Shown here piece after piece: positions 41,511 through 49,230 of a DNA stretch of 64,000 nucleotides (position 1 is the stretch's first letter; each line of letters opens with the position of its first letter). The DNA comes from Tubulanus polymorphus (lineage: Eukaryota > Animalia > Nemertea): positions 9,618,655-9,682,654 of the forward strand of contig NC_134033.1 of assembly GCF_964204645.1 (NCBI RefSeq), given 5' to 3'. A program made the position numbers and the translations under genes. The notes beneath the pieces were generated by a model. That model searched no databases and had not been told where the DNA came from. It was given only the letters and a program-made list of their open reading frames with translations.

Positions 41511-41964
41511 TCATTTTTGTAGGACATGAAAAACCTTCTTTAAAAAGAAACGCAACAATTTGTAACGTTTTACGCGTTCTAGCATTTTGCCTAGTGTGAA
41601 TGTACATGAACCCGTTATAATTGTTGAAGCAAGTCCCTCATAAATGACTCTGTCACCTACGGGATCTTTGAATTCTACTTGAGTGATAGAATGTTTAACG
41701 AAACGTCCAAGAATAAACGAGCCACAACACGCAGAGTTCCTGTCTCCAGAATCACTTTTATTACACGAACTGATCACAACGGTCTGAATGTCTACAGCGG
41801 TCTCCCCAAACGGTCCAAAAAACCCAGTATATATAGTTAATTCCCCAACCAATCTCATTAGCGAACGACATTACCAAAACCCACTGTCTAATTTCTCGTT
41901 CGTGCAACAGCAAATATTTACGAAAGGACGGTATACGTGACAGTTTCCCATTAAAATGTCGCAT
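41511..41964 (-). pseudogene. Unknown Cys/aromatic-rich ORF downstream of the RAG1-like transposase (two overlapping frames)
   Basis: ORFs 41761-41964 (..WTVWGDRCRHSDRCD) and 41511-41858 (..CCGSFILGRFVKHSITQVEFKDPVGDRVIYEG..) look like one frameshifted gene on the transposase strand. Confidence 0.4.
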
Positions 41965-42149: not shown

Positions 42150-44360
42150 TTAGAAGATGGCAGCATTCTCTATGAATTGAGACTGCTGTTGAAACTCAAT
42201 AATACCGTTGTCACAAATATATTCGTTTAACTACATCATTTAATTTTTCGATTCCCTGGCCGCTATAAGACTTTATCGAATGATATTTCATCAACATATA
42301 TGGTATATGGTAGACCATTATATGGATGTACGGTGTTACATTAGTTTTTGTACCCTTTTCTTGAAGCACCTAGAGAAAGGAATTGTTCTAACCATAGTTT
42401 TGCTTCCTCAAAATATTCTAAATGCACAGTGCTTCCGTCGTTTGTTTGATTTTTACTAAACAATGAGCTGAGCAAGTCTGAAAATTTTTGCCACAAACCT
42501 AGTACTTTTGACTTAGTTACAGGATGAATTATATCTGCATCCTGTAATTTCAGAGGCAAGAATGATGATAATACTTTCTTGAAATCTGGGCCTTGTAATG
42601 ATGACCACTCAAGCACACCCAAACCACTATGAGTGACAGGGTGTTTCTTTTCCCAAATGTGATAACATACACCACAGTCTGCTATTAGGGTACATAAATT
42701 TTGTAAGCCTGGTCCAATTATGCCATGATTTTGAGAACTGTGAAATTGAGTTCCATCATCCCTATCTTTGACATCATTTATAAGGTTACGTAATAACACA
42801 TCTCCAACTCTAGCATTAGATGTAGTTCATCTATCACTACATTTTCTGGCTCAATTTCAAATAATGGCAAATTAAACATTCCATTACTTTTACTCATCAC
42901 ATCAATTTTCATTGCAGCCGAAGTTCTGGGGAATGATAAAAATCCCATGGCTTGCTCGTGTCAAATCTAAAATCTTTGTGAACCTTACAATAAATGCAAC
43001 ATTCATTTGATGTTGAACCTTTTATCCCATATACCAGCTGTAAGAATTTCAGATCACCTCCCATGGTAAAATCCAAATGAAATGAAACATCGTTTAGACT
43101 AACTGATTCCTGATTTATCAATGAATTTATGTCTGCACTCACAGGGGCAAGACCTTGCTTCAAATGGTCATACCTGTCTGGCCACTTCAAAATAGCAAAT
43201 GCCCTTGGCAATCCAGGGAGCTCATTGTCAACAAGACTCAATGACATGGTTATGAAAGATGATGTTTTACTCATGTTTGCTCCATCTCCGCCTATCTTGA
43301 CAGTAAATTGATTAGTATAGCCAATTCTATCTATTTGTTTGATCCTATCAAACAATGCAGTTTTAAAATCGATATAACACCCAGGAATTCCACCAGTGGT
43401 CCTATTGATTACGATGCCTTTTGACAATTCATTTCTGCACGGAATGATTAGTGATTTTGACGGGAGTGCATCACCTGCCACCGATAGTTCATGGAATGCT
43501 GCATCGCTGACGAAATATTGATCTAGAATATAAAGTAGATCTTTGAATTTTGACTGTCCCTCCTGAGACAAATTTTGATATGAAGAACCACTGATAAATT
43601 CTGCTTGGTGCCAAATTTTACTTCGTAAACGTTTTCAGACTTTGAACAGGCCAATTTCAAAGATTAGGGCACAAGCCCATAGGTCTCCGCAAACCACAGA
43701 GACTTCTCTGCTTCAGTCTCTAACTGTCTAAGATTGCGCTTAACCTGCAATGATCCTAGTTCAGAAACTTTCTTACCAGAATTCACTTTCAATGGTTTAC
43801 TAAGGAGTTTCTCAAGTTGTTCTGCAAGGACTGCCTTGCATGACTCTAATTTTTCTATTTTGACAACATTTGACTTTTCTTTAGACAATGCTTCCTGAAG
43901 TGAAGCATATGTTTTGTCTAAGTTGGCAGTTAGGGATAAATCTTCATGTTCCAAAGAGGACACATGTTTGACCGCAACATTTACTTGTACCAGCTCATGG
44001 AAATAAACTTTCACCGAGTGGTTTTCTTCACTGAACTTTAAAAAAGTTCGACCATTCCATTTCCCCTGTTTATACTTTTTATGGACACGAGAAAGGAGTT
44101 CAGATATACGTTTCTCAACACGTGTTACAAAATGTTGAATATTAATAAAATTTAATGTGTTGTTTAAAAAACAAATAAAACTAAAGTTAGGATGCTTATC
44201 CTTAATACTCTTGAGTTCTCTCACAGTCTGGTACTTACATAAAATAAGATAAAGTTATCTTCAGCACTACTATCATCAAACCCGAGTGAAGACTAAGTTC
44301 TGATTTCATTCTTGAATCTTACAGAGCTGTATCTACCGATGTAGTCAATGACTTAGTCAT
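42150..44360 (-). pseudogene. RAG1/Transib/Chapaev-superfamily DDE transposase, frameshifted
   Basis: Ordered motifs KIGGDG (first D), GGDLKFL (second D), CIYC, VIDELHLML/RVGDVLL, WSSLQG, VTPYIHIMVYHIP, SYSGQGIEKLN (catalytic E) parallel RAG1 core KESCDG, GYDEK, CTLC, IDALH, ITNYFHKTLAHVP, ASEGNESGN. Coiled-coil N-terminus at 43664-44224. Confidence 0.85.
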
Positions 44361-44366
44361 ACATTT

Positions 44367-44884
44367 TTAGTTTTGAACTGGATTAAGTGTTAACATGTCA
44401 CAGGCCACAGTTAGAGATTTTAGTACAACACTTTCAATTAGATATCTCAATGTTTTCACAAGATTTCCATCAGATACAAAATATCTAGACCTCGAAAAGC
44501 TAAGCGATGGCCTCAATTTACCGGAAATAATAATTTTGTTCCCTGTCCGTTTTTATCTAGACGGTACCACCAAGCACTAGATAGTGCCAATTCTCCAAAA
44601 TCGGCAAAATTGTATAAGTTGAAATCACCATCATCCGCTAGCGCGCCTTTTCCATGAAACAACTTCCTGAATATGTCCAGTGGAAAGAGTATTCTGATTT
44701 TTACAGTCCCCTCAACTAGACGAGATGAGATAGCATCTTCAAACGTCGCAGCAGCATCCAAAAGCCGTCTCCGTGACACATCAGGGTTGTAAAAATTATC
44801 TATTTAATGATCGGGTATGTGTCTGCCAGGCTCCCAAGTGCAGTCGTTACGTGACCAGTCCTGCCAAACAATTAGATACAGTGT
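44367..44884 (-). pseudogene. Chromodomain gene exon 2 (C-terminal half of chromodomain plus unknown domain)
   Basis: Acceptor ttttcAG| phase 0: TLYLIVWQDWSRNDCTWEPGRHIPDH*IDNFYNPD, in frame with ORF 44513-44779; after a frameshift it ends at TAA 44367. Confidence 0.75.
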
Positions 44885-45072
44885 CTGAAAATAGAAATAC
44901 AAGGTTATATAGTTTTCTGAATAAATCTTGTCAGTCAAAGCCGCTGCTGGTACCCACGTTCAATCCAGAAAAGTTTCTAACACCAGGCAGAAAGGGTCTG
45001 ACGCCATGCGATTTCAAGGGTGTAGGGCCTACCTCCAACAGATACATACAAATACAGTTTATTGTAATGGGT

Positions 45073-48000
45073 GTATGTATGTATGTATGTATGTATATTT
45101 ATTTTATTATTGTGACATGTAGTTATAAGTCTTCTTTACCAACACATAATATATACATTTCAACACTACCCAGCCCTCAACGGGCTTATAAGTCACCATT
45201 AATTAGAATTATTTATAGATATATTCAAGTGGCACTGAAAGTACATGAACTCCTTTTACTCCAACACTTCAATAAAGGTTGCTAGAGTTATTTGATAGTT
45301 AGCCGTTAATATTTGAAACTGTTGTTGTTTTGTTAGTTCTTGGAAGTCATGCACCTCCTGACATGCACCTGTGACATATCTACAAAAAGTTTATACCGTT
45401 CTTGTTCGTATTTCTTACATGACATAATAAAGTGAAATTCATCTTCAACGCATGCTTCAGGTCTACAAAAGTTACATACGCGTTCCTCAACCCTTTTACC
45501 CCTAAACCGACCCAATTCTATTTCCAAACCCAGGACACCACACCTTAGCTGTGCTTATAAGCTTCTCTTCTTTCTTGACGTAAAATTCATTATATAACTC
45601 TCAGCCCCGAAAGTATTCTTAAATGTAATATACGTGCGTAATTTTGGTTTATTATTAACTTCAGAAATCCACTGCTCACTAATTGATAATTCAATACACC
45701 TTTGTGCGTGCTTCATATCAACTCGTTGTAAATTATCTATGAAATTAGTATTTAAACCGAGGCTTCGACATAAGTTACCAAAATCTCGGAACCAACCAAT
45801 ATTCAAATCACGTAATTGGAGAAATATACGTTTAGTGAGTCTATCATCCGCCATAGCGATAAGTCTATTCCAAAGACGGAAAATTTCAAAATAACGCTTT
45901 TACTTAGCTGGATACCATCCAAAGTCACCCTGCATTGCCGCAATGGGGGTTAATGACCCCACACCGAGAAAAAATCTAATGGCTCTAGTTTGCACCCTTT
46001 CTATCAGTTTATTATTCTTAAAACCCCACACACCGGCTCCGTAACTAAGTATAGGGTCCACAAATGATTCATATAGTTTAGTGAACGTTTTATAAGCGAT
46101 ATCATACTGTGATTTTAACTTATACATTAATTTCCCTAAAGCTCTGCCTCCAGAATTAGACAGGACGGTTGTATGATCATTGAAGTTTAATGTACTGTCT
46201 AGCCAAACGCCGAGCTATTTATAAGAATTTACGTTTGTAATTGATTCATTTCGCCACTTAAATTCAAATAGCGTTTGCAATTTATTTTTTGCTCTAAACT
46301 GAACCACTGCCGTTTTCTCTAGATTGATTGCTAGTGCCCATTTTCTGCACCAACGTTCAAAAATATCAATCAGATTTTGTAATTTTTCTTTACTGTCAGC
46401 AATTAATACTATGTCATCTGCGTAGGCTAGGCAATTTACAGAAAATGCATTTTCACTTGTTGCATTCAACTCTATAATTACATCATTTAAGAATATGTTA
46501 CACAGGGTCGGAGAAGCTGGGTCGCCCTGTTTTACACCGTTTGAATAGTTAAACCATTCACTGTAGTGGGTGTTATTTAAAATCAAATCTAAGAGTTTGT
46601 CTTTGCTGGTGCGAACCTCTAAACCTATTGAACTTTTTTTCGAAGTAAACCATATTTGACCAGACGATATTCAACTCTTCATCCCAATATGGTTTTCTAT
46701 TTTTGATAGACTTCTTAGAAAATTTTGAGAGATCTCTAGACTGGAGAAAGGCATCCATTTCTCTGGTTATAACCATACATAAATTGTTATATATTACATC
46801 TATAACATTTTTTTCATTTTCCGCTTGTTCAATATTATTACAAATTATCTCTAATGCATTGACAAATATTTCATTTGACATGAATTCTGCTGGCACCTGA
46901 TTAAAATAATAACGTTTACGTGACTGTGCATTTCCCGACCTCATATCATTGTTTTGTTGTAGATCATTTTTACATTGATTCAGATTTGATAAAACCAATG
47001 TTATTTTAACATCGCGTGGTCAGGCGCTTTACTTCTATTTGATATGAGAGTCTCTGCATGCGCATCTTTCACAAGATCTAATGGGAGTTTCACAGAAAAG
47101 TCAGAAACTTTTTCGAACTGATCATAGGGCAAGGCGACATAGTCAACGACTGATCTTCCTTTTCCCGAAATGCTGGTAAAATTGTTCGAATGTTCTTTGA
47201 AACGACCGTTCAGTACACACAATTGAGCGTCATTTAATAGTTCAACGAAAGAGTTACCATGTGCGTTTGATTGTTTATCTACAACTGTACGGACCGGTAC
47301 TGATACATCCGGACAACTAATATCGTTTTGTTCACCTATTCTCGCATTGAAGTCTCCACACAGAAGAATGACATCGCTTCCCGAGTTCAAATAGATAGTT
47401 AATAGAATATAACTTAAAAATTGAGTGCAGTTGCGACCCCATGGTGAACCTTCGGGAGGTAGGTACGCGTTTATTAACACAAATCAAATTTTGTAATTTT
47501 ATCCTCTAGATGAATAATAAGTAAACCATCAACAGATTTTTCGATTGACTTTACATTGAAAACACTTAACAGATCATTTCGTATGAGAATACCAATTCCA
47601 CCATGGTTTATCGCTGCGTTTTTGTGTTTCAACAGTCTACTGTGAGGTATCCACGTATAGTATTCAATGTCTATGCTGTCTGTTTCATTGTTATTTAAAT
47701 GTGTCTCCTGCAGACACACAATATCAACTCAATTAACTTAGTCCTCATTACGTTTTTTACCTCGTAGTTTAATTCTAAATCACTTATCAAATCCTTGGCT
47801 TTTTCAAGTAGGTTTTCGGTAGATTCGTACTTTATTCCAGAAACAATTGGTATTTTCTGGTAGGAAAGGCTCACACAGTCTGCTGCCATTTCATTCTTCT
47901 CCTCTTCAAGGGAAGATAGCCTTCCTTCAACCAGCTCAATTCGACTCTTCATATCGTCTTCGAAACTATTCAATCGTGTCTCGAAATTCTCAAACGAGTT

Positions 48001-48716
48001 ACTCAGTTTGGCTGTACTTTACTTTACTCAGTCTCGATCTGGAAGTCATCTCTAGTCGATTTCGATTCACTTTTGACGCTCTTCACCAGTGTGTTGAGTC
48101 GTTCCTGCATGGAGGCTTTGAATGATCTTTGTTCTTTAATCGACGTATCAAAGTTTGTATTTAAACACTGAATTGCGTCTAGGATCTTTATTACGGAGTC
48201 TGAACTGTCTTCAGAAACATCATTAAGTTGTTCTGCGATGTTATTTTTTTTGGTGTCTTTTTGGGAGGTCTTTTGGGACTTTTGATTCCAGCCTCATCAC
48301 TTGTCGATGAGTGTTTCCTCGATTGTTTTGACGAACTGGTATTTGACATATCGGCAATACGGGGATTAACATCAACACCATATACAGTCTATAGATTAAC
48401 GACTATACAGTTCAATTCACACGGATAAGTCTTCGGCGTTCGTATTCTACAACCATTCATGCGTGACGAATCTACGCGTATGTATGTACTTTATGTGAGA
48501 ATATTTTGAAGTCAACGATAATATACGCAAAGTCTGTAAATCAGTTACAGTAGAGCATCGGTCGAAAAAAAAAACAATCTGTACCTCGTCCAGAATATTT
48601 TCGCTGTTACAACAATTAAGTTCAGTCTATTGACGGTTCCTCGATCATGTATAGAAACAAACTTTTCCACGGAGCAGTGACAGAACACTGCTGACCTTTA
48701 CCGCCATCTTGAATAC
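45073..48716 (-). mobile_element. Non-LTR retrotransposon (APE-type LINE) with ORF1 and ORF2, internally deleted, TSD-flanked
   Basis: TSD TAATGGGT at 45065-45072 and 48717-48724; 5' end gtattcaagatggcgg; AATAAA then (ACAT)n tail; endonuclease CLQETHL, GDFNARIG, VVDY, PDH; RT GVKQGDPASP, AYADD; C-terminal C..C..EDEFHFIMSC; coiled-coil ORF1 at ~47730-48350. Confidence 0.93.
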
Positions 48717-48849
48717 TAATGGGTATCCACTATTTAAATATTATACTACTATTTCATTACTTGTAAAATGGAATTATGGAATTCCCCAATCATCTGCGGT
48801 ACTGGTAGGAGAATGAATATTTTTTTCTTCGAGGAGGAAATATACTCAC

Positions 48850-49041
48850 TTCATTGCCGTGATTTTTATAGCTAATTGTGCGTTCAACGAAATAAAAGTC
48901 CTCCAGAACATTCCTTGTTTGTTTAGCAATTCTTTTATTATTCAGCAGTTGAAAATCACCAGCAAGACGCTTAAAATTGATATATTTGTGCCTCAAATCG
49001 TAAGGTTTCACGTCCCTCGCGTCTCGCATGCGCGCAGCCAT
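48850..49041 (-). CDS. Chromodomain gene exon 1
   Basis: AAAATGGCT start; MAARMRDARDVKPYDLRH...EDFYFVERTISYKNHGNE|GTGAGT donor in phase 0; completes the chromodomain with exon 2. Confidence 0.72.
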
Positions 49042-49230
49042 TTTGATATGCAGCAGCGCCATAGCGGTAGAGACGAAAATCAATATGAACGCAATTGTTG
49101 GTAATGTCATGACTTCGAATGGAAAGGCAACTGAAATTATGCCCACGAGGCTCACGGTACAATTAAATACTGACACAAACTGACGCACTACGGACACCCA
49201 AAATTTTGTTACACCCCCCCCCCCCCCCCC

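What the first reader, a model, noticed from the sequence alone, without database searches (positions are those of the whole stretch)
42150..49041. RAG1-like transposase paired with a spliced chromodomain gene: a possible RAG2-independent chromatin-reading partner
Seen: the minus-strand transposase keeps every RAG1-core landmark in order (D in KIGGDG, D in GGDLK, CxxC, IDELH, HxxxxH, E in GQGIE). Removing the LINE and splicing 48850 to 44884 (GT-AG, phase 0) reveals a chromodomain missed by the ORF track: FYFVERTISYKNHGNE|TLYLIVWQDWSRNDCTWEPGRHIP. Aromatic residues sit at all three cage positions (Y...W-x-x-W). Its stop (44367) lies only 6 nt before the apparent transposase ATG (44360). Established: RAG1 derives from Transib-like transposases, vertebrate RAG2 reads H3K4me3 through a PHD finger, and cage-intact chromodomains bind methyl-lysine. 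Inference: this is one multi-gene transposon whose accessory gene reads methylated histones and could steer integration, analogous to but independent of RAG2. This copy is decayed.
Basis: partly seen in the sequence, partly recalled or inferred. Interest (0 to 1): 0.82.

Follow-up and report, generated by a model that had tools for sequence, protein, structure and literature searches.

The report
RAG1-fold transposon with chromodomain partner
This is a dead copy of a two-gene jumping element whose cutting enzyme has the same fold as RAG1, the enzyme that builds our antibody genes, and which always travels with a small histone-mark-reader gene; that pairing may be an independent parallel to RAG1-RAG2.

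Summary
On the minus strand the window holds a decayed transposase (44360-42211, at least 4 frameshifts, C-terminus missing). Upstream lies a two-exon gene (49041-48850 and 44884-44367) whose intron carries a LINE.

A 49-sequence profile of the transposase family hits amphioxus RAG1L and RAG1 (E 1.6e-9 and 2e-9). An AlphaFold model of an intact paralogue (pLDDT 92.8) matches only RAG1, Transib and RAGL structures strongly (E 1e-14, TM about 0.6).

Exon 2 passes Pfam Chromo. Natural spliced coral homologues cover the whole chromodomain (E 1.6e-14), and the cage aromatics are present.

A homologue of the partner gene lies just upstream of all nine paralogous transposase copies in this genome (Tubulanus polymorphus). 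The pairing recurs on six contigs from other organisms, once in convergent orientation. More remote transposase relatives lack the partner.

The closest named group is Chapaev (DUF1280) within the Transib/RAG1 clan. However, the ends start CAT rather than CAC, no target-site duplication is visible, and there is no Chapa zinc finger.

Histone reading and steering of integration remain inference. No paper describing this pairing was found. The scan has already found this family on other DNA of the same genome (s1-496673 and three others).

The parts
49075..49106 (-). 5' terminal inverted repeat of the element. It starts CATTACCAACAAT at 49106, read on the minus strand.
   Evidence: 28 of the first 32 bases match the 5' end of the intact paralogue family on contigs C1 and C10, although the proteins are only about 43% identical. 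It lies about 65 bases upstream of the partner gene's ATG, much as in the intact family.
48850..49041 (-). Exon 1 of the chromodomain partner gene. It runs from the ATG at 49041 and ends with the first chromodomain strand (YFVERTISYKNHGNE), followed by the donor GTGAGT.
   Evidence: Sequence. Homologous exon 1 sequences lie at the same place in families A and B and in L071, all ending before a GT donor.
44885..48849 (-). Intron of the partner gene, swollen to about 4 kb by a LINE insertion.
   Evidence: In intact paralogues the intron is about 0.6 kb (family A) and 1.25 kb (family B).
45333..48349 (-). Coding remains of the LINE: ORF1-like piece, endonuclease, partial reverse transcriptase and a C-terminal part. 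All are broken.
   Evidence: Pfam Exo_endo_phos_2, Exo_endo_phos and RVT_1 (E 7.5e-22).
44367..44884 (-). Exon 2 of the partner gene: the rest of the chromodomain plus a conserved C-terminal domain of about 120 aa. It is broken by a TAA at 44806-44804 and a frameshift near 44520.
   Evidence: Pfam Chromo at 27.8 bits. tblastn against the intact family A exon 2 gives 45% identity over 128 aa, then a change of frame. Alignment A3.
42211..44360 (-). Pseudogene of the RAG1-fold DDE transposase. It lies in five frame segments and covers residues 73-747 of an 861-aa intact paralogue. There is a stop at codon 4, and the last ~115 residues and the 3' inverted repeat were not found.
   Evidence: Homology and fold of the family.

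Best explanation
The window holds a dead, LINE-interrupted and 3'-truncated copy of a two-gene cut-and-paste DNA transposon.

Shown:
- Gene 2 encodes a DDE transposase with the RAG1/Transib core: an RNase H fold, a CxxC plus HxxxxH zinc site and a D-x-x-H motif.
- Gene 1, just upstream on the same strand, is a two-exon gene for a protein of about 230 aa. It has an HP1-type chromodomain, split by a phase-0 intron, and a conserved C-terminal domain with no known fold relative.
- The two genes are bounded by short inverted repeats that start CAT.

Inferred:
- The partner binds the transposase through its C-terminal domain.
- Through its aromatic cage it binds methylated histone H3 tails (H3K9me or H3K27me type, judged by its nearest chromodomains).
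- It thereby tethers the transposition complex to marked, probably silent, chromatin and biases where the element lands.
- This is the job that chromodomains do for chromovirus integrases. In outline it also resembles how the PHD finger of RAG2 couples RAG1 to H3K4me3.
- The very short spacer between the genes (6 to 36 bases in several lineages) and the single 5' exon next to the end repeat suggest one promoter with alternative splicing or reinitiation.
For: Transposase:
- The profile of 49 family members hits BbRAG1L (6b40, E 1.6e-9) and RAG1 (E 2e-9). The alignment runs through the second Asp, CxxC, DxxH, HxxxxH and Glu.
- The AlphaFold model has pLDDT 92.8 and pTM 0.85.
- Foldseek's top 40+ hits are all RAG1 (E 1e-14, TM 0.58-0.60 over about 580 columns), then HzTransib (2.4e-10) and BbRAGL (6.7e-10). 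The next fold is the P element transposase, at only 3e-4.

Linkage:
- All nine paralogous loci in the genome carry the partner just upstream.
- The same arrangement is seen in L067, L070, L071, L072 and L068. L066 has it in convergent orientation.
- Identity matrices of the two proteins correlate (r 0.61, Mantel p 0.023).
- Only these two coding units are conserved between families A and B.

Mobility:
- Two family A copies are 99% identical over 5.7 kb, have different flanks and carry 22-base inverted repeats.
- A 495-base non-autonomous derivative has the same ends.

Chromodomain:
- Pfam Chromo scores above its cut-off in every copy.
- Natural spliced coral models cover profile positions 3-52 of 53 (E 1.6e-14 and 7e-12).
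- The nearest solved chromodomains are CBX5, CBX1, CBX2 and CDY (E 5e-8), with the cage residues aligned.
Against: - No RNA data could be found, so the splice, the transcript structure and expression are untested here.
- No target-site duplication is visible at any of the four full-length insertions or at the small derivative. The ends start CAT, not the CAC of Transib, RAG and Chapaev. The integration chemistry therefore cannot simply be assumed to be Transib-like.
- Histone binding, contact between the partner and the transposase, and any effect on target choice are untested.
- The partner's C-terminal domain matches no known fold, so nothing indicates what it binds.
- More remote transposase relatives (L096, L097, L098) lack the partner, so it is not essential to the enzyme type as such.
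- Four of the family B copies on C12 share flanks and are segmental duplicates, so there are fewer independent insertions than loci.
Confidence: 0.6

Rival explanations
1. One gene, not two. Alternative splicing joins the chromodomain exons, or exon 1 alone, to the transposase reading frame. The chromodomain is then an N-terminal domain of the transposase itself, as in chromovirus integrases. A separate small protein is a by-product or a regulator, as with TnpA and TnpD of En/Spm.
For: The spacer between the partner's stop and the transposase ATG is tiny in several lineages: 6 bases in the window, 11 in L067 and 36 in L072. Exon 1 starts about 50-70 bases inside the end repeat, which leaves room for only one promoter.
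Against: Every intact copy has an in-frame stop at the end of the partner gene and a conserved transposase ATG. In L066 the two genes are convergent, which excludes a fusion there. Coral gene models annotate the partner as a stand-alone protein of 170-233 aa. The RefSeq transposase model P0001 holds no chromodomain.
Confidence: 0.15
2. The partner does not aim integration. Instead it manages silencing. It could act as an HP1 mimic or decoy that shields the element from heterochromatin-based repression, or as a self-limiting inhibitor of transposition.
For: The chromodomain is HP1/CBX/CDY-like, but the protein lacks a chromoshadow domain (Pfam finds only Chromo). It could therefore occupy methyl marks without recruiting silencing factors.
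Against: The C-terminal domain diverges in step with the transposase. That fits a direct partner of the enzyme better than a free-standing decoy. This is suggestive only.
Confidence: 0.2
3. Chance neighbours, or a host chromodomain gene that one copy happened to capture. On this view it is not a functional unit of the transposon.
For: In the window alone, the two genes are both broken and are separated from each other and from their context by other repeats.
Against: The pairing recurs at every paralogous locus and in at least six other lineages whose transposases are only 24-45% identical. Both genes lie inside the same inverted repeats.
Confidence: 0.02

Closest known systems
RAG1-RAG2 recombinase and RAG-like (ProtoRAG/RAGL) transposons
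   Same: The transposase has the same catalytic core fold and the same motif order as RAG1 and RAG1L. Both are two-gene elements in which the second protein carries a histone-tail reader module. One lineage (L066) even has the convergent gene orientation.
   Different: The partner is a chromodomain plus a novel ~120-aa domain, not a Kelch propeller plus PHD finger. Orientation is usually head-to-tail. The ends start CAT and lack an RSS-like heptamer. No 5-base duplication is seen. Pfam RAG1 scores only below threshold. No RAG1 N-terminal zinc finger is present.
Chapaev transposons (Pfam DUF1280; CMC/Transib clan)
   Same: This is the closest named transposase group. DUF1280 gives sub-threshold hits in 3 of 49 members, and the nearest ESM Atlas clusters are DUF1280 clusters. 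The literature equates DUF1280 with Chapaev and places it with RAG1 (PMC3985635) and inside the Transib superfamily (PMC4411706). A true DUF1280 family is also present in this genome (L016, E 1.6e-22).
   Different: Identity to that DUF1280 family is only about 25%. No Chapa zinc-finger N-terminus is present; the N-terminus is coiled-coil-like with scattered cysteines. The ends do not start CAC, and no 3-4 base duplication is seen. No paper found links Chapaev to a chromodomain gene.
Canonical Transib (e.g. Helicoverpa zea Transib)
   Same: Shared core fold (Foldseek E 2.4e-10, TM 0.60 by target). Both are cut-and-paste elements with short inverted repeats.
   Different: Transib encodes a transposase only. 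It has CACAATG-like termini and typically a 5-base duplication (PMC1131882), although a 2026 preprint reports that these traits vary (10.64898/2026.08.26.747230). HzTransib was not reached by the sequence profile, while RAG1 and RAG1L were.
Chromoviruses (Ty3/gypsy retrotransposons with an integrase chromodomain)
   Same: A mobile element carries an HP1-type chromodomain. In chromoviruses this domain directs integration to heterochromatin (general knowledge, not tested here).
   Different: Chromoviruses have a retroviral-type integrase with the chromodomain fused to it. Here the enzyme is a RAG1-fold transposase, and the chromodomain sits on a separate protein.
PIF/Harbinger and En/Spm two-protein DNA transposons
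   Same: These are DNA transposons that need, or at least encode, a second non-catalytic protein.
   Different: Their partners are Myb-like or TnpA DNA-binding proteins, not histone readers. Their transposases have different folds or belong to other branches.

Membership tests
RAG1/Transib-fold transposases (Transib superfamily in the wide sense of Kapitonov and Koonin 2015) | Catalytic core with D, D, E on an RNase H fold plus the CxxC and HxxxxH zinc site, homologous to the RAG1 core | tested here: met
   Profile against the PDB: BbRAG1L E 1.6e-9 and RAG1 E 2e-9, aligned through all motifs. Foldseek: RAG1 E 1e-14, TM about 0.59. Invariant D167, D244, C263, C266 and H325.
RAG1/Transib-fold transposases (Transib superfamily in the wide sense of Kapitonov and Koonin 2015) | 5-base target-site duplication | tested here: inconclusive
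   No direct repeat of 2-10 bases flanks the family A copies (C1, C10), the family B copies (C12, C2) or the 495-base derivative. There are too few independent insertions, and no empty site was available.
RAG1/Transib-fold transposases (Transib superfamily in the wide sense of Kapitonov and Koonin 2015) | Inverted repeats that begin 5'-CAC with an RSS-like heptamer | tested here: not met
   Ends begin CATTACCAACAAT (family A, the window and the small derivative) and CATGCCGAAC (family B).
RAG-like (RAGL/ProtoRAG) transposons | A RAG2-like Kelch/PHD gene next to the RAG1-like gene | tested here: not met
   Only two coding units are conserved between families A and B: the chromodomain gene and the transposase. 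Pfam finds only Chromo in the partner.
Chapaev (Pfam DUF1280) | Match to PF06918 above its cut-off | tested here: not met
   The intact paralogue scores 15 bits against a cut-off of 25. At E <= 0.05, 3 of 49 family members hit DUF1280, best E 3.2e-7. A different family in the same genome (L016) does pass, at E 1.6e-22.
Chapaev (Pfam DUF1280) | N-terminal Chapa (NZD-like) zinc-finger domain | tested here: not met
   The first ~230 residues of the intact paralogue hold five scattered cysteines and give only weak coiled-coil-type matches. This rests on inspection, not on a Chapa profile, which was not available.
Chapaev (Pfam DUF1280) | CAC termini and a 3-4 base duplication (TWA in Chapaev3, PMC3014272) | tested here: not met
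   CAT termini. No TWA or other short duplication is visible.
Chromodomain (Pfam PF00385) | Profile match above the gathering score | tested here: met
   Window exon 2 scores 27.8 bits against a cut-off of 25.1. Paralogues score 27.5-31.6 bits and other lineages up to 36.7 bits. Natural spliced coral homologues score 54 and 45.5 bits and cover positions 3-52 of 53.
Chromodomain (Pfam PF00385) | Three aromatic cage residues | tested here: met
   Window: Y in YFVER, then W-Q-D-W. Family A: Y, W, Y. Family B: Y, W, Y. Coral P0180: F, W, F, aligned to Y, W, F of CBX5. The first residue lies in exon 1, so for the window this relies on the splice.
Chromodomain (Pfam PF00385) | Binding of methylated lysine | not testable with these tools
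   Needs peptide-binding assays.
HP1 family proper | Chromoshadow domain after the chromodomain | tested here: not met
   No Chromo_shadow hit. The C-terminal domain model (pLDDT 86) has no fold match: Foldseek has nothing below E 0.1, the best VIA Z-score is 4.0, and the Atlas returns only its own cnidarian cluster.

The most novel reading that the evidence does not exclude
A clade of RAG1-fold transposases has, independently of RAG2, recruited an obligatory partner that reads histone methylation. DNA cleavage or integration would then be licensed by chromatin state through a chromodomain instead of a PHD finger. That would make coupling to a histone reader a recurrent solution for this enzyme type, not a one-off on the road to V(D)J recombination.
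Probability: 0.3. Interest if true: 0.85.

Novelty: new variant of a known kind. Interest (0 to 1): 0.68.

Why it matters
RAG2 is the unexplained half of the origin of V(D)J recombination. It is not clear why a RAG1-type transposase acquired a histone-reading cofactor, or what that cofactor did in the transposon. This family offers a second, apparently independent case of the same enzyme fold travelling with a histone reader: a chromodomain rather than a PHD finger. It is conserved across a clade that includes copies with uninterrupted reading frames, which makes the question open to experiment: whether the partner is needed, what mark it reads, and whether it changes target choice. The family also adds a well-defined lineage between Chapaev and RAG1/Transib, with atypical ends. 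Its partner carries a conserved domain of unknown fold.

Tried and rejected
- **RNA evidence.** The only runs holding the element were DNA-like contig sets, and the one possible RNA run had none of it. Splicing and expression therefore remain untested.
- **3' end of the window copy.** No inverted-repeat partner was found, either by pattern with up to 3 mismatches or by short-word BLAST. There was also no DNA similarity to the 3' region of family A.
- **Target-site duplication.** I compared the flanks of four full-length copies and the small derivative and followed up all 32 genomic matches to the 13-base terminal motif. Only one more derivative turned up, and it was truncated.
- **Partner's C-terminal domain.** Pfam, a PDB sequence search, Foldseek, VIA-align and the ESM Atlas gave no relative outside the family.
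- **Word-based protein searches.** The search with a single partner sequence found nothing; the profile search did. The search with the transposase found only 3 proteins, whereas the exhaustive profile search found 6230. The family is common, not rare.
- **Canonical RAG1 in this genome.** None was detected with PF12940, but the control rang nowhere, so this says little. No tree including RAG1, RAG1L and Transib could be built, because no such sequences were available by reference.
- **Chance adjacency.** Considered and rejected because of the recurrence.
- **Joined spliced product.** The exons were searched separately by reference, and the full chromodomain was assessed on natural gene models of relatives instead.
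Full report
**What is in the window**

On the minus strand between 49106 and 42211 lie, in order:
- a terminal inverted repeat;
- a short exon;
- a 4-kb intron filled by a LINE;
- a second exon;
- after 6 bases, a broken transposase gene.

Mapping an intact paralogue onto the window shows five frame segments covering residues 73-747 of 861. The first ~70 codons are degenerate, with a stop at codon 4 after the ATG at 44360. No trace of the last ~115 residues was found.

Exon 1 ends at 48850 before GTGAGT, and exon 2 starts at 44884 after a polypyrimidine tract and AG.

The LINE has endonuclease and reverse-transcriptase remains.

Exon 2 is itself damaged, by a TAA at 44806-44804 inside the last chromodomain helix and a frameshift near 44520.

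**The transposase has the RAG1 fold**

The genome is Tubulanus polymorphus, a nemertean, according to the name of an identical RefSeq protein. It holds nine paralogous loci at about 43% protein identity to the window copy, some with open frames of 744-882 codons.

Single sequences give nothing significant in Pfam and only E about 0.3 against RAG1 chains. An exhaustive profile search then found a large family: 6230 cluster representatives at E <= 1e-3 and 454 at E <= 1e-30.

A profile of 49 members hits amphioxus RAG1L (E 1.6e-9) and zebrafish and mouse RAG1 (E 2e-9 to 1e-5). The alignments run co-linearly through the second Asp, CxxC, DxxH, HxxxxH and Glu.

An AlphaFold model of residues 225-790 of the intact C1 paralogue has pLDDT 92.8 and pTM 0.85. 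Foldseek returns more than 40 RAG1 chains first (E about 1e-14, TM 0.58-0.60 over about 580 columns). HzTransib (E 2.4e-10) and BbRAGL (E 6.7e-10) follow. The next fold, the P element transposase, is ten orders of magnitude weaker.

**Which named group is closest**

Pfam scans of all 49 members give only sub-threshold hits: RAG1 in 5 members and DUF1280 in 3. The ESM Atlas places the protein nearest to DUF1280 clusters and next to RAG1 clusters.

Majorek et al. equate DUF1280 with Chapaev transposases and cluster it with RAG1 (PMC3985635). Kapitonov and Koonin count Chapaev and Chapaev3 as clades of the Transib superfamily and describe their N-terminal Chapa zinc finger (PMC4411706).

This family has no such cysteine-rich N-terminus. 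A true DUF1280 family with 863-codon frames also exists in this genome, at about 25% identity. The family of interest is therefore best described as a Chapaev-related lineage of the RAG1/Transib clan that meets none of the subgroup definitions cleanly.

**The partner gene**

Exon 2 of the window scores above the Pfam Chromo cut-off, and so do all paralogues and the homologues from other organisms. In every case the match begins at profile position 16-18, directly at the splice acceptor. Exon 1 ends, in every lineage where it was found, with a 15-17 residue stretch that fits the first chromodomain strand. Examples are YFVERTIS in the window, YIIKRLIT in family A, YDVERIIS in family B and YSIDRIIC in L071. 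Each is followed by a GT donor.

Instead, a profile search with exon-2 products found natural gene models in corals: Pocillopora ("heterochromatin protein 1-like"), Stylophora and Montipora, plus a transcript-like contig. In two of these (P0176, P0180) Pfam Chromo covers positions 3-52 of 53 (E 1.6e-14 and 7e-12), and in the transcript-like contig P0169 positions 4-51.

Their chromodomains are closest to CBX5, CBX1, CBX2 and CDY (E about 5e-8), with the three cage positions aligned to aromatic residues. Behind the chromodomain lies a conserved domain of about 120 aa (alignment A3). Its model has pLDDT 86. It has no fold relative in the PDB or the Atlas apart from its own cnidarian cluster.

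**Linkage of the two genes**

A homologue of the partner lies just upstream of the transposase at every one of the nine paralogous loci. The same holds on contigs from other, unnamed organisms:
- L067: 11-base spacer.
- L070.
- L071: exon 1, intron and exon 2.
- L072: its transposase falls in the same 90%-identity cluster as Ixodes scapularis proteins; 36-base spacer.
- L068: has an extra intron.
- L066: the partner is convergent with the transposase.

Pairwise identities of the two proteins correlate (r 0.61, Mantel p 0.023). Between families A and B nothing else is conserved at protein level, so there is no RAG2-like gene.

Three more remote transposase relatives (L096, L097, L098) have no detectable partner. 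They form a well-supported separate clade (100/99) in a 12-sequence tree rooted for drawing on the DUF1280 family. The partner-bearing lineages are not resolved among themselves.

**Ends and mobility**

Family A has two copies, on C1 and C10, that are 99% identical over 5.7 kb. Their flanks are unrelated, and they carry 22-base inverted repeats beginning CATTACCAACAAT. A 495-base non-autonomous derivative has the same ends.

The window copy keeps the 5' repeat: 28 of the first 32 bases match family A, although the proteins are only 43% identical. This argues that the termini are under constraint and that 49106 is the true end.

Family B is 6.76 kb long and ends in CATGCCGAAC. Its four C12 copies share flanks and are segmental duplicates. 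The C20 copy is a near-identical twin of the C2 copy.

No target-site duplication of any length is visible at any insertion. An AGTCATG motif next to three different termini is unexplained.

**Mechanism**

Shown:
- the fold of the enzyme;
- the identity and cage of the chromodomain;
- the conserved pairing;
- the transposon ends.

Inferred:
- the partner docks on the transposase through its C-terminal domain;
- it tethers the complex to methylated H3, biasing integration.

This would be analogous to chromovirus integrases and, in outline, to the PHD finger of RAG2. Alternatives are a fused product made by alternative splicing, or a role in evading or tuning silencing.

**Prior work**

Searches for Transib, RAG1L or Chapaev together with chromodomain terms found no description of this pairing. 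Surveys of RAGL and Transib diversity do not mention it (PMC9435367; 10.1101/2023.08.20.553239). Repbase and Dfam could not be consulted.

The scan itself had already noted the family on four other pieces of this genome. One follow-up reached the same reading. My tests were made independently and agree with it.

Noticed in passing
L016 (G000:C3:4084483-4087824), with near-identical matches at L017-L020: A second, distantly related transposase family (863-codon open frame, at least five copies) is a true Pfam DUF1280 (Chapaev) member (E 1.6e-22). By eye it carries a cysteine/histidine-rich, PHD-like insertion between the DxxH-equivalent region and the HxxxxH motif. If real, this would be a histone-reader-type module inside the enzyme itself.
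   Followed up: partly
window 49107-49116; L021 just outside the 3' end; family B 5' end (G000:C12 near 10066810): The motif AGTCATG lies directly next to, or overlapping, the terminal repeat at three termini of three different subfamilies. It may be a target preference, a duplicated tip or an older terminus. No target-site duplication was found at any copy.
   Followed up: partly
L061 and L062 (G000:C1:25755863-25756358 and 25762299-25762791): Two copies of a ~495-base non-autonomous element carry the family A terminal repeats. They lie 6.4 kb apart with the same G-rich flanks, so they sit inside a local duplication. A third, truncated copy is at C1:14060344.
   Followed up: partly
L021:3534-3867 and L021:6257-6475: Contig depth in public runs jumps about 100-fold at two short stretches inside the family A element: one just after the transposase stop, the other between the two genes. 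High-copy short repeats therefore appear to be nested there. The first stretch is bounded by a 38-base inverted repeat.
   Followed up: no
G000:C12 copies at 9.07, 10.07, 10.40 and 11.15 Mb; G000:C20:113000-123000 versus C2:12561000-12571000: The four family B copies on C12 share kilobases of flanking sequence, so they are segmental duplicates. The C20 contig is 99.5% identical to the C2 locus, so it is a haplotig or a recent duplication. Copy number therefore overstates the number of transposition events.
   Followed up: partly
L096:14297-22283: On a contig from another organism, a remote transposase relative lies next to a Polinton/Maverick-like gene set (rve integrase with its own chromodomain, faint Pox_A32 ATPase, RING finger). 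It is unrelated to the partner gene studied here.
   Followed up: no
P0108 (Lithocolla globosa transcriptome) and P0145: Two family members have long N-terminal extensions (about 500 and 300 residues) with no Pfam match. One comes from a protist transcriptome, which hints that the family may reach beyond animals, or may reflect contamination.
   Followed up: no
window 41511-41858 (minus strand): A 115-codon open frame lies directly downstream of the truncated transposase. It has no Pfam match and was not examined further. It may mark what replaced the element's 3' end.
   Followed up: no
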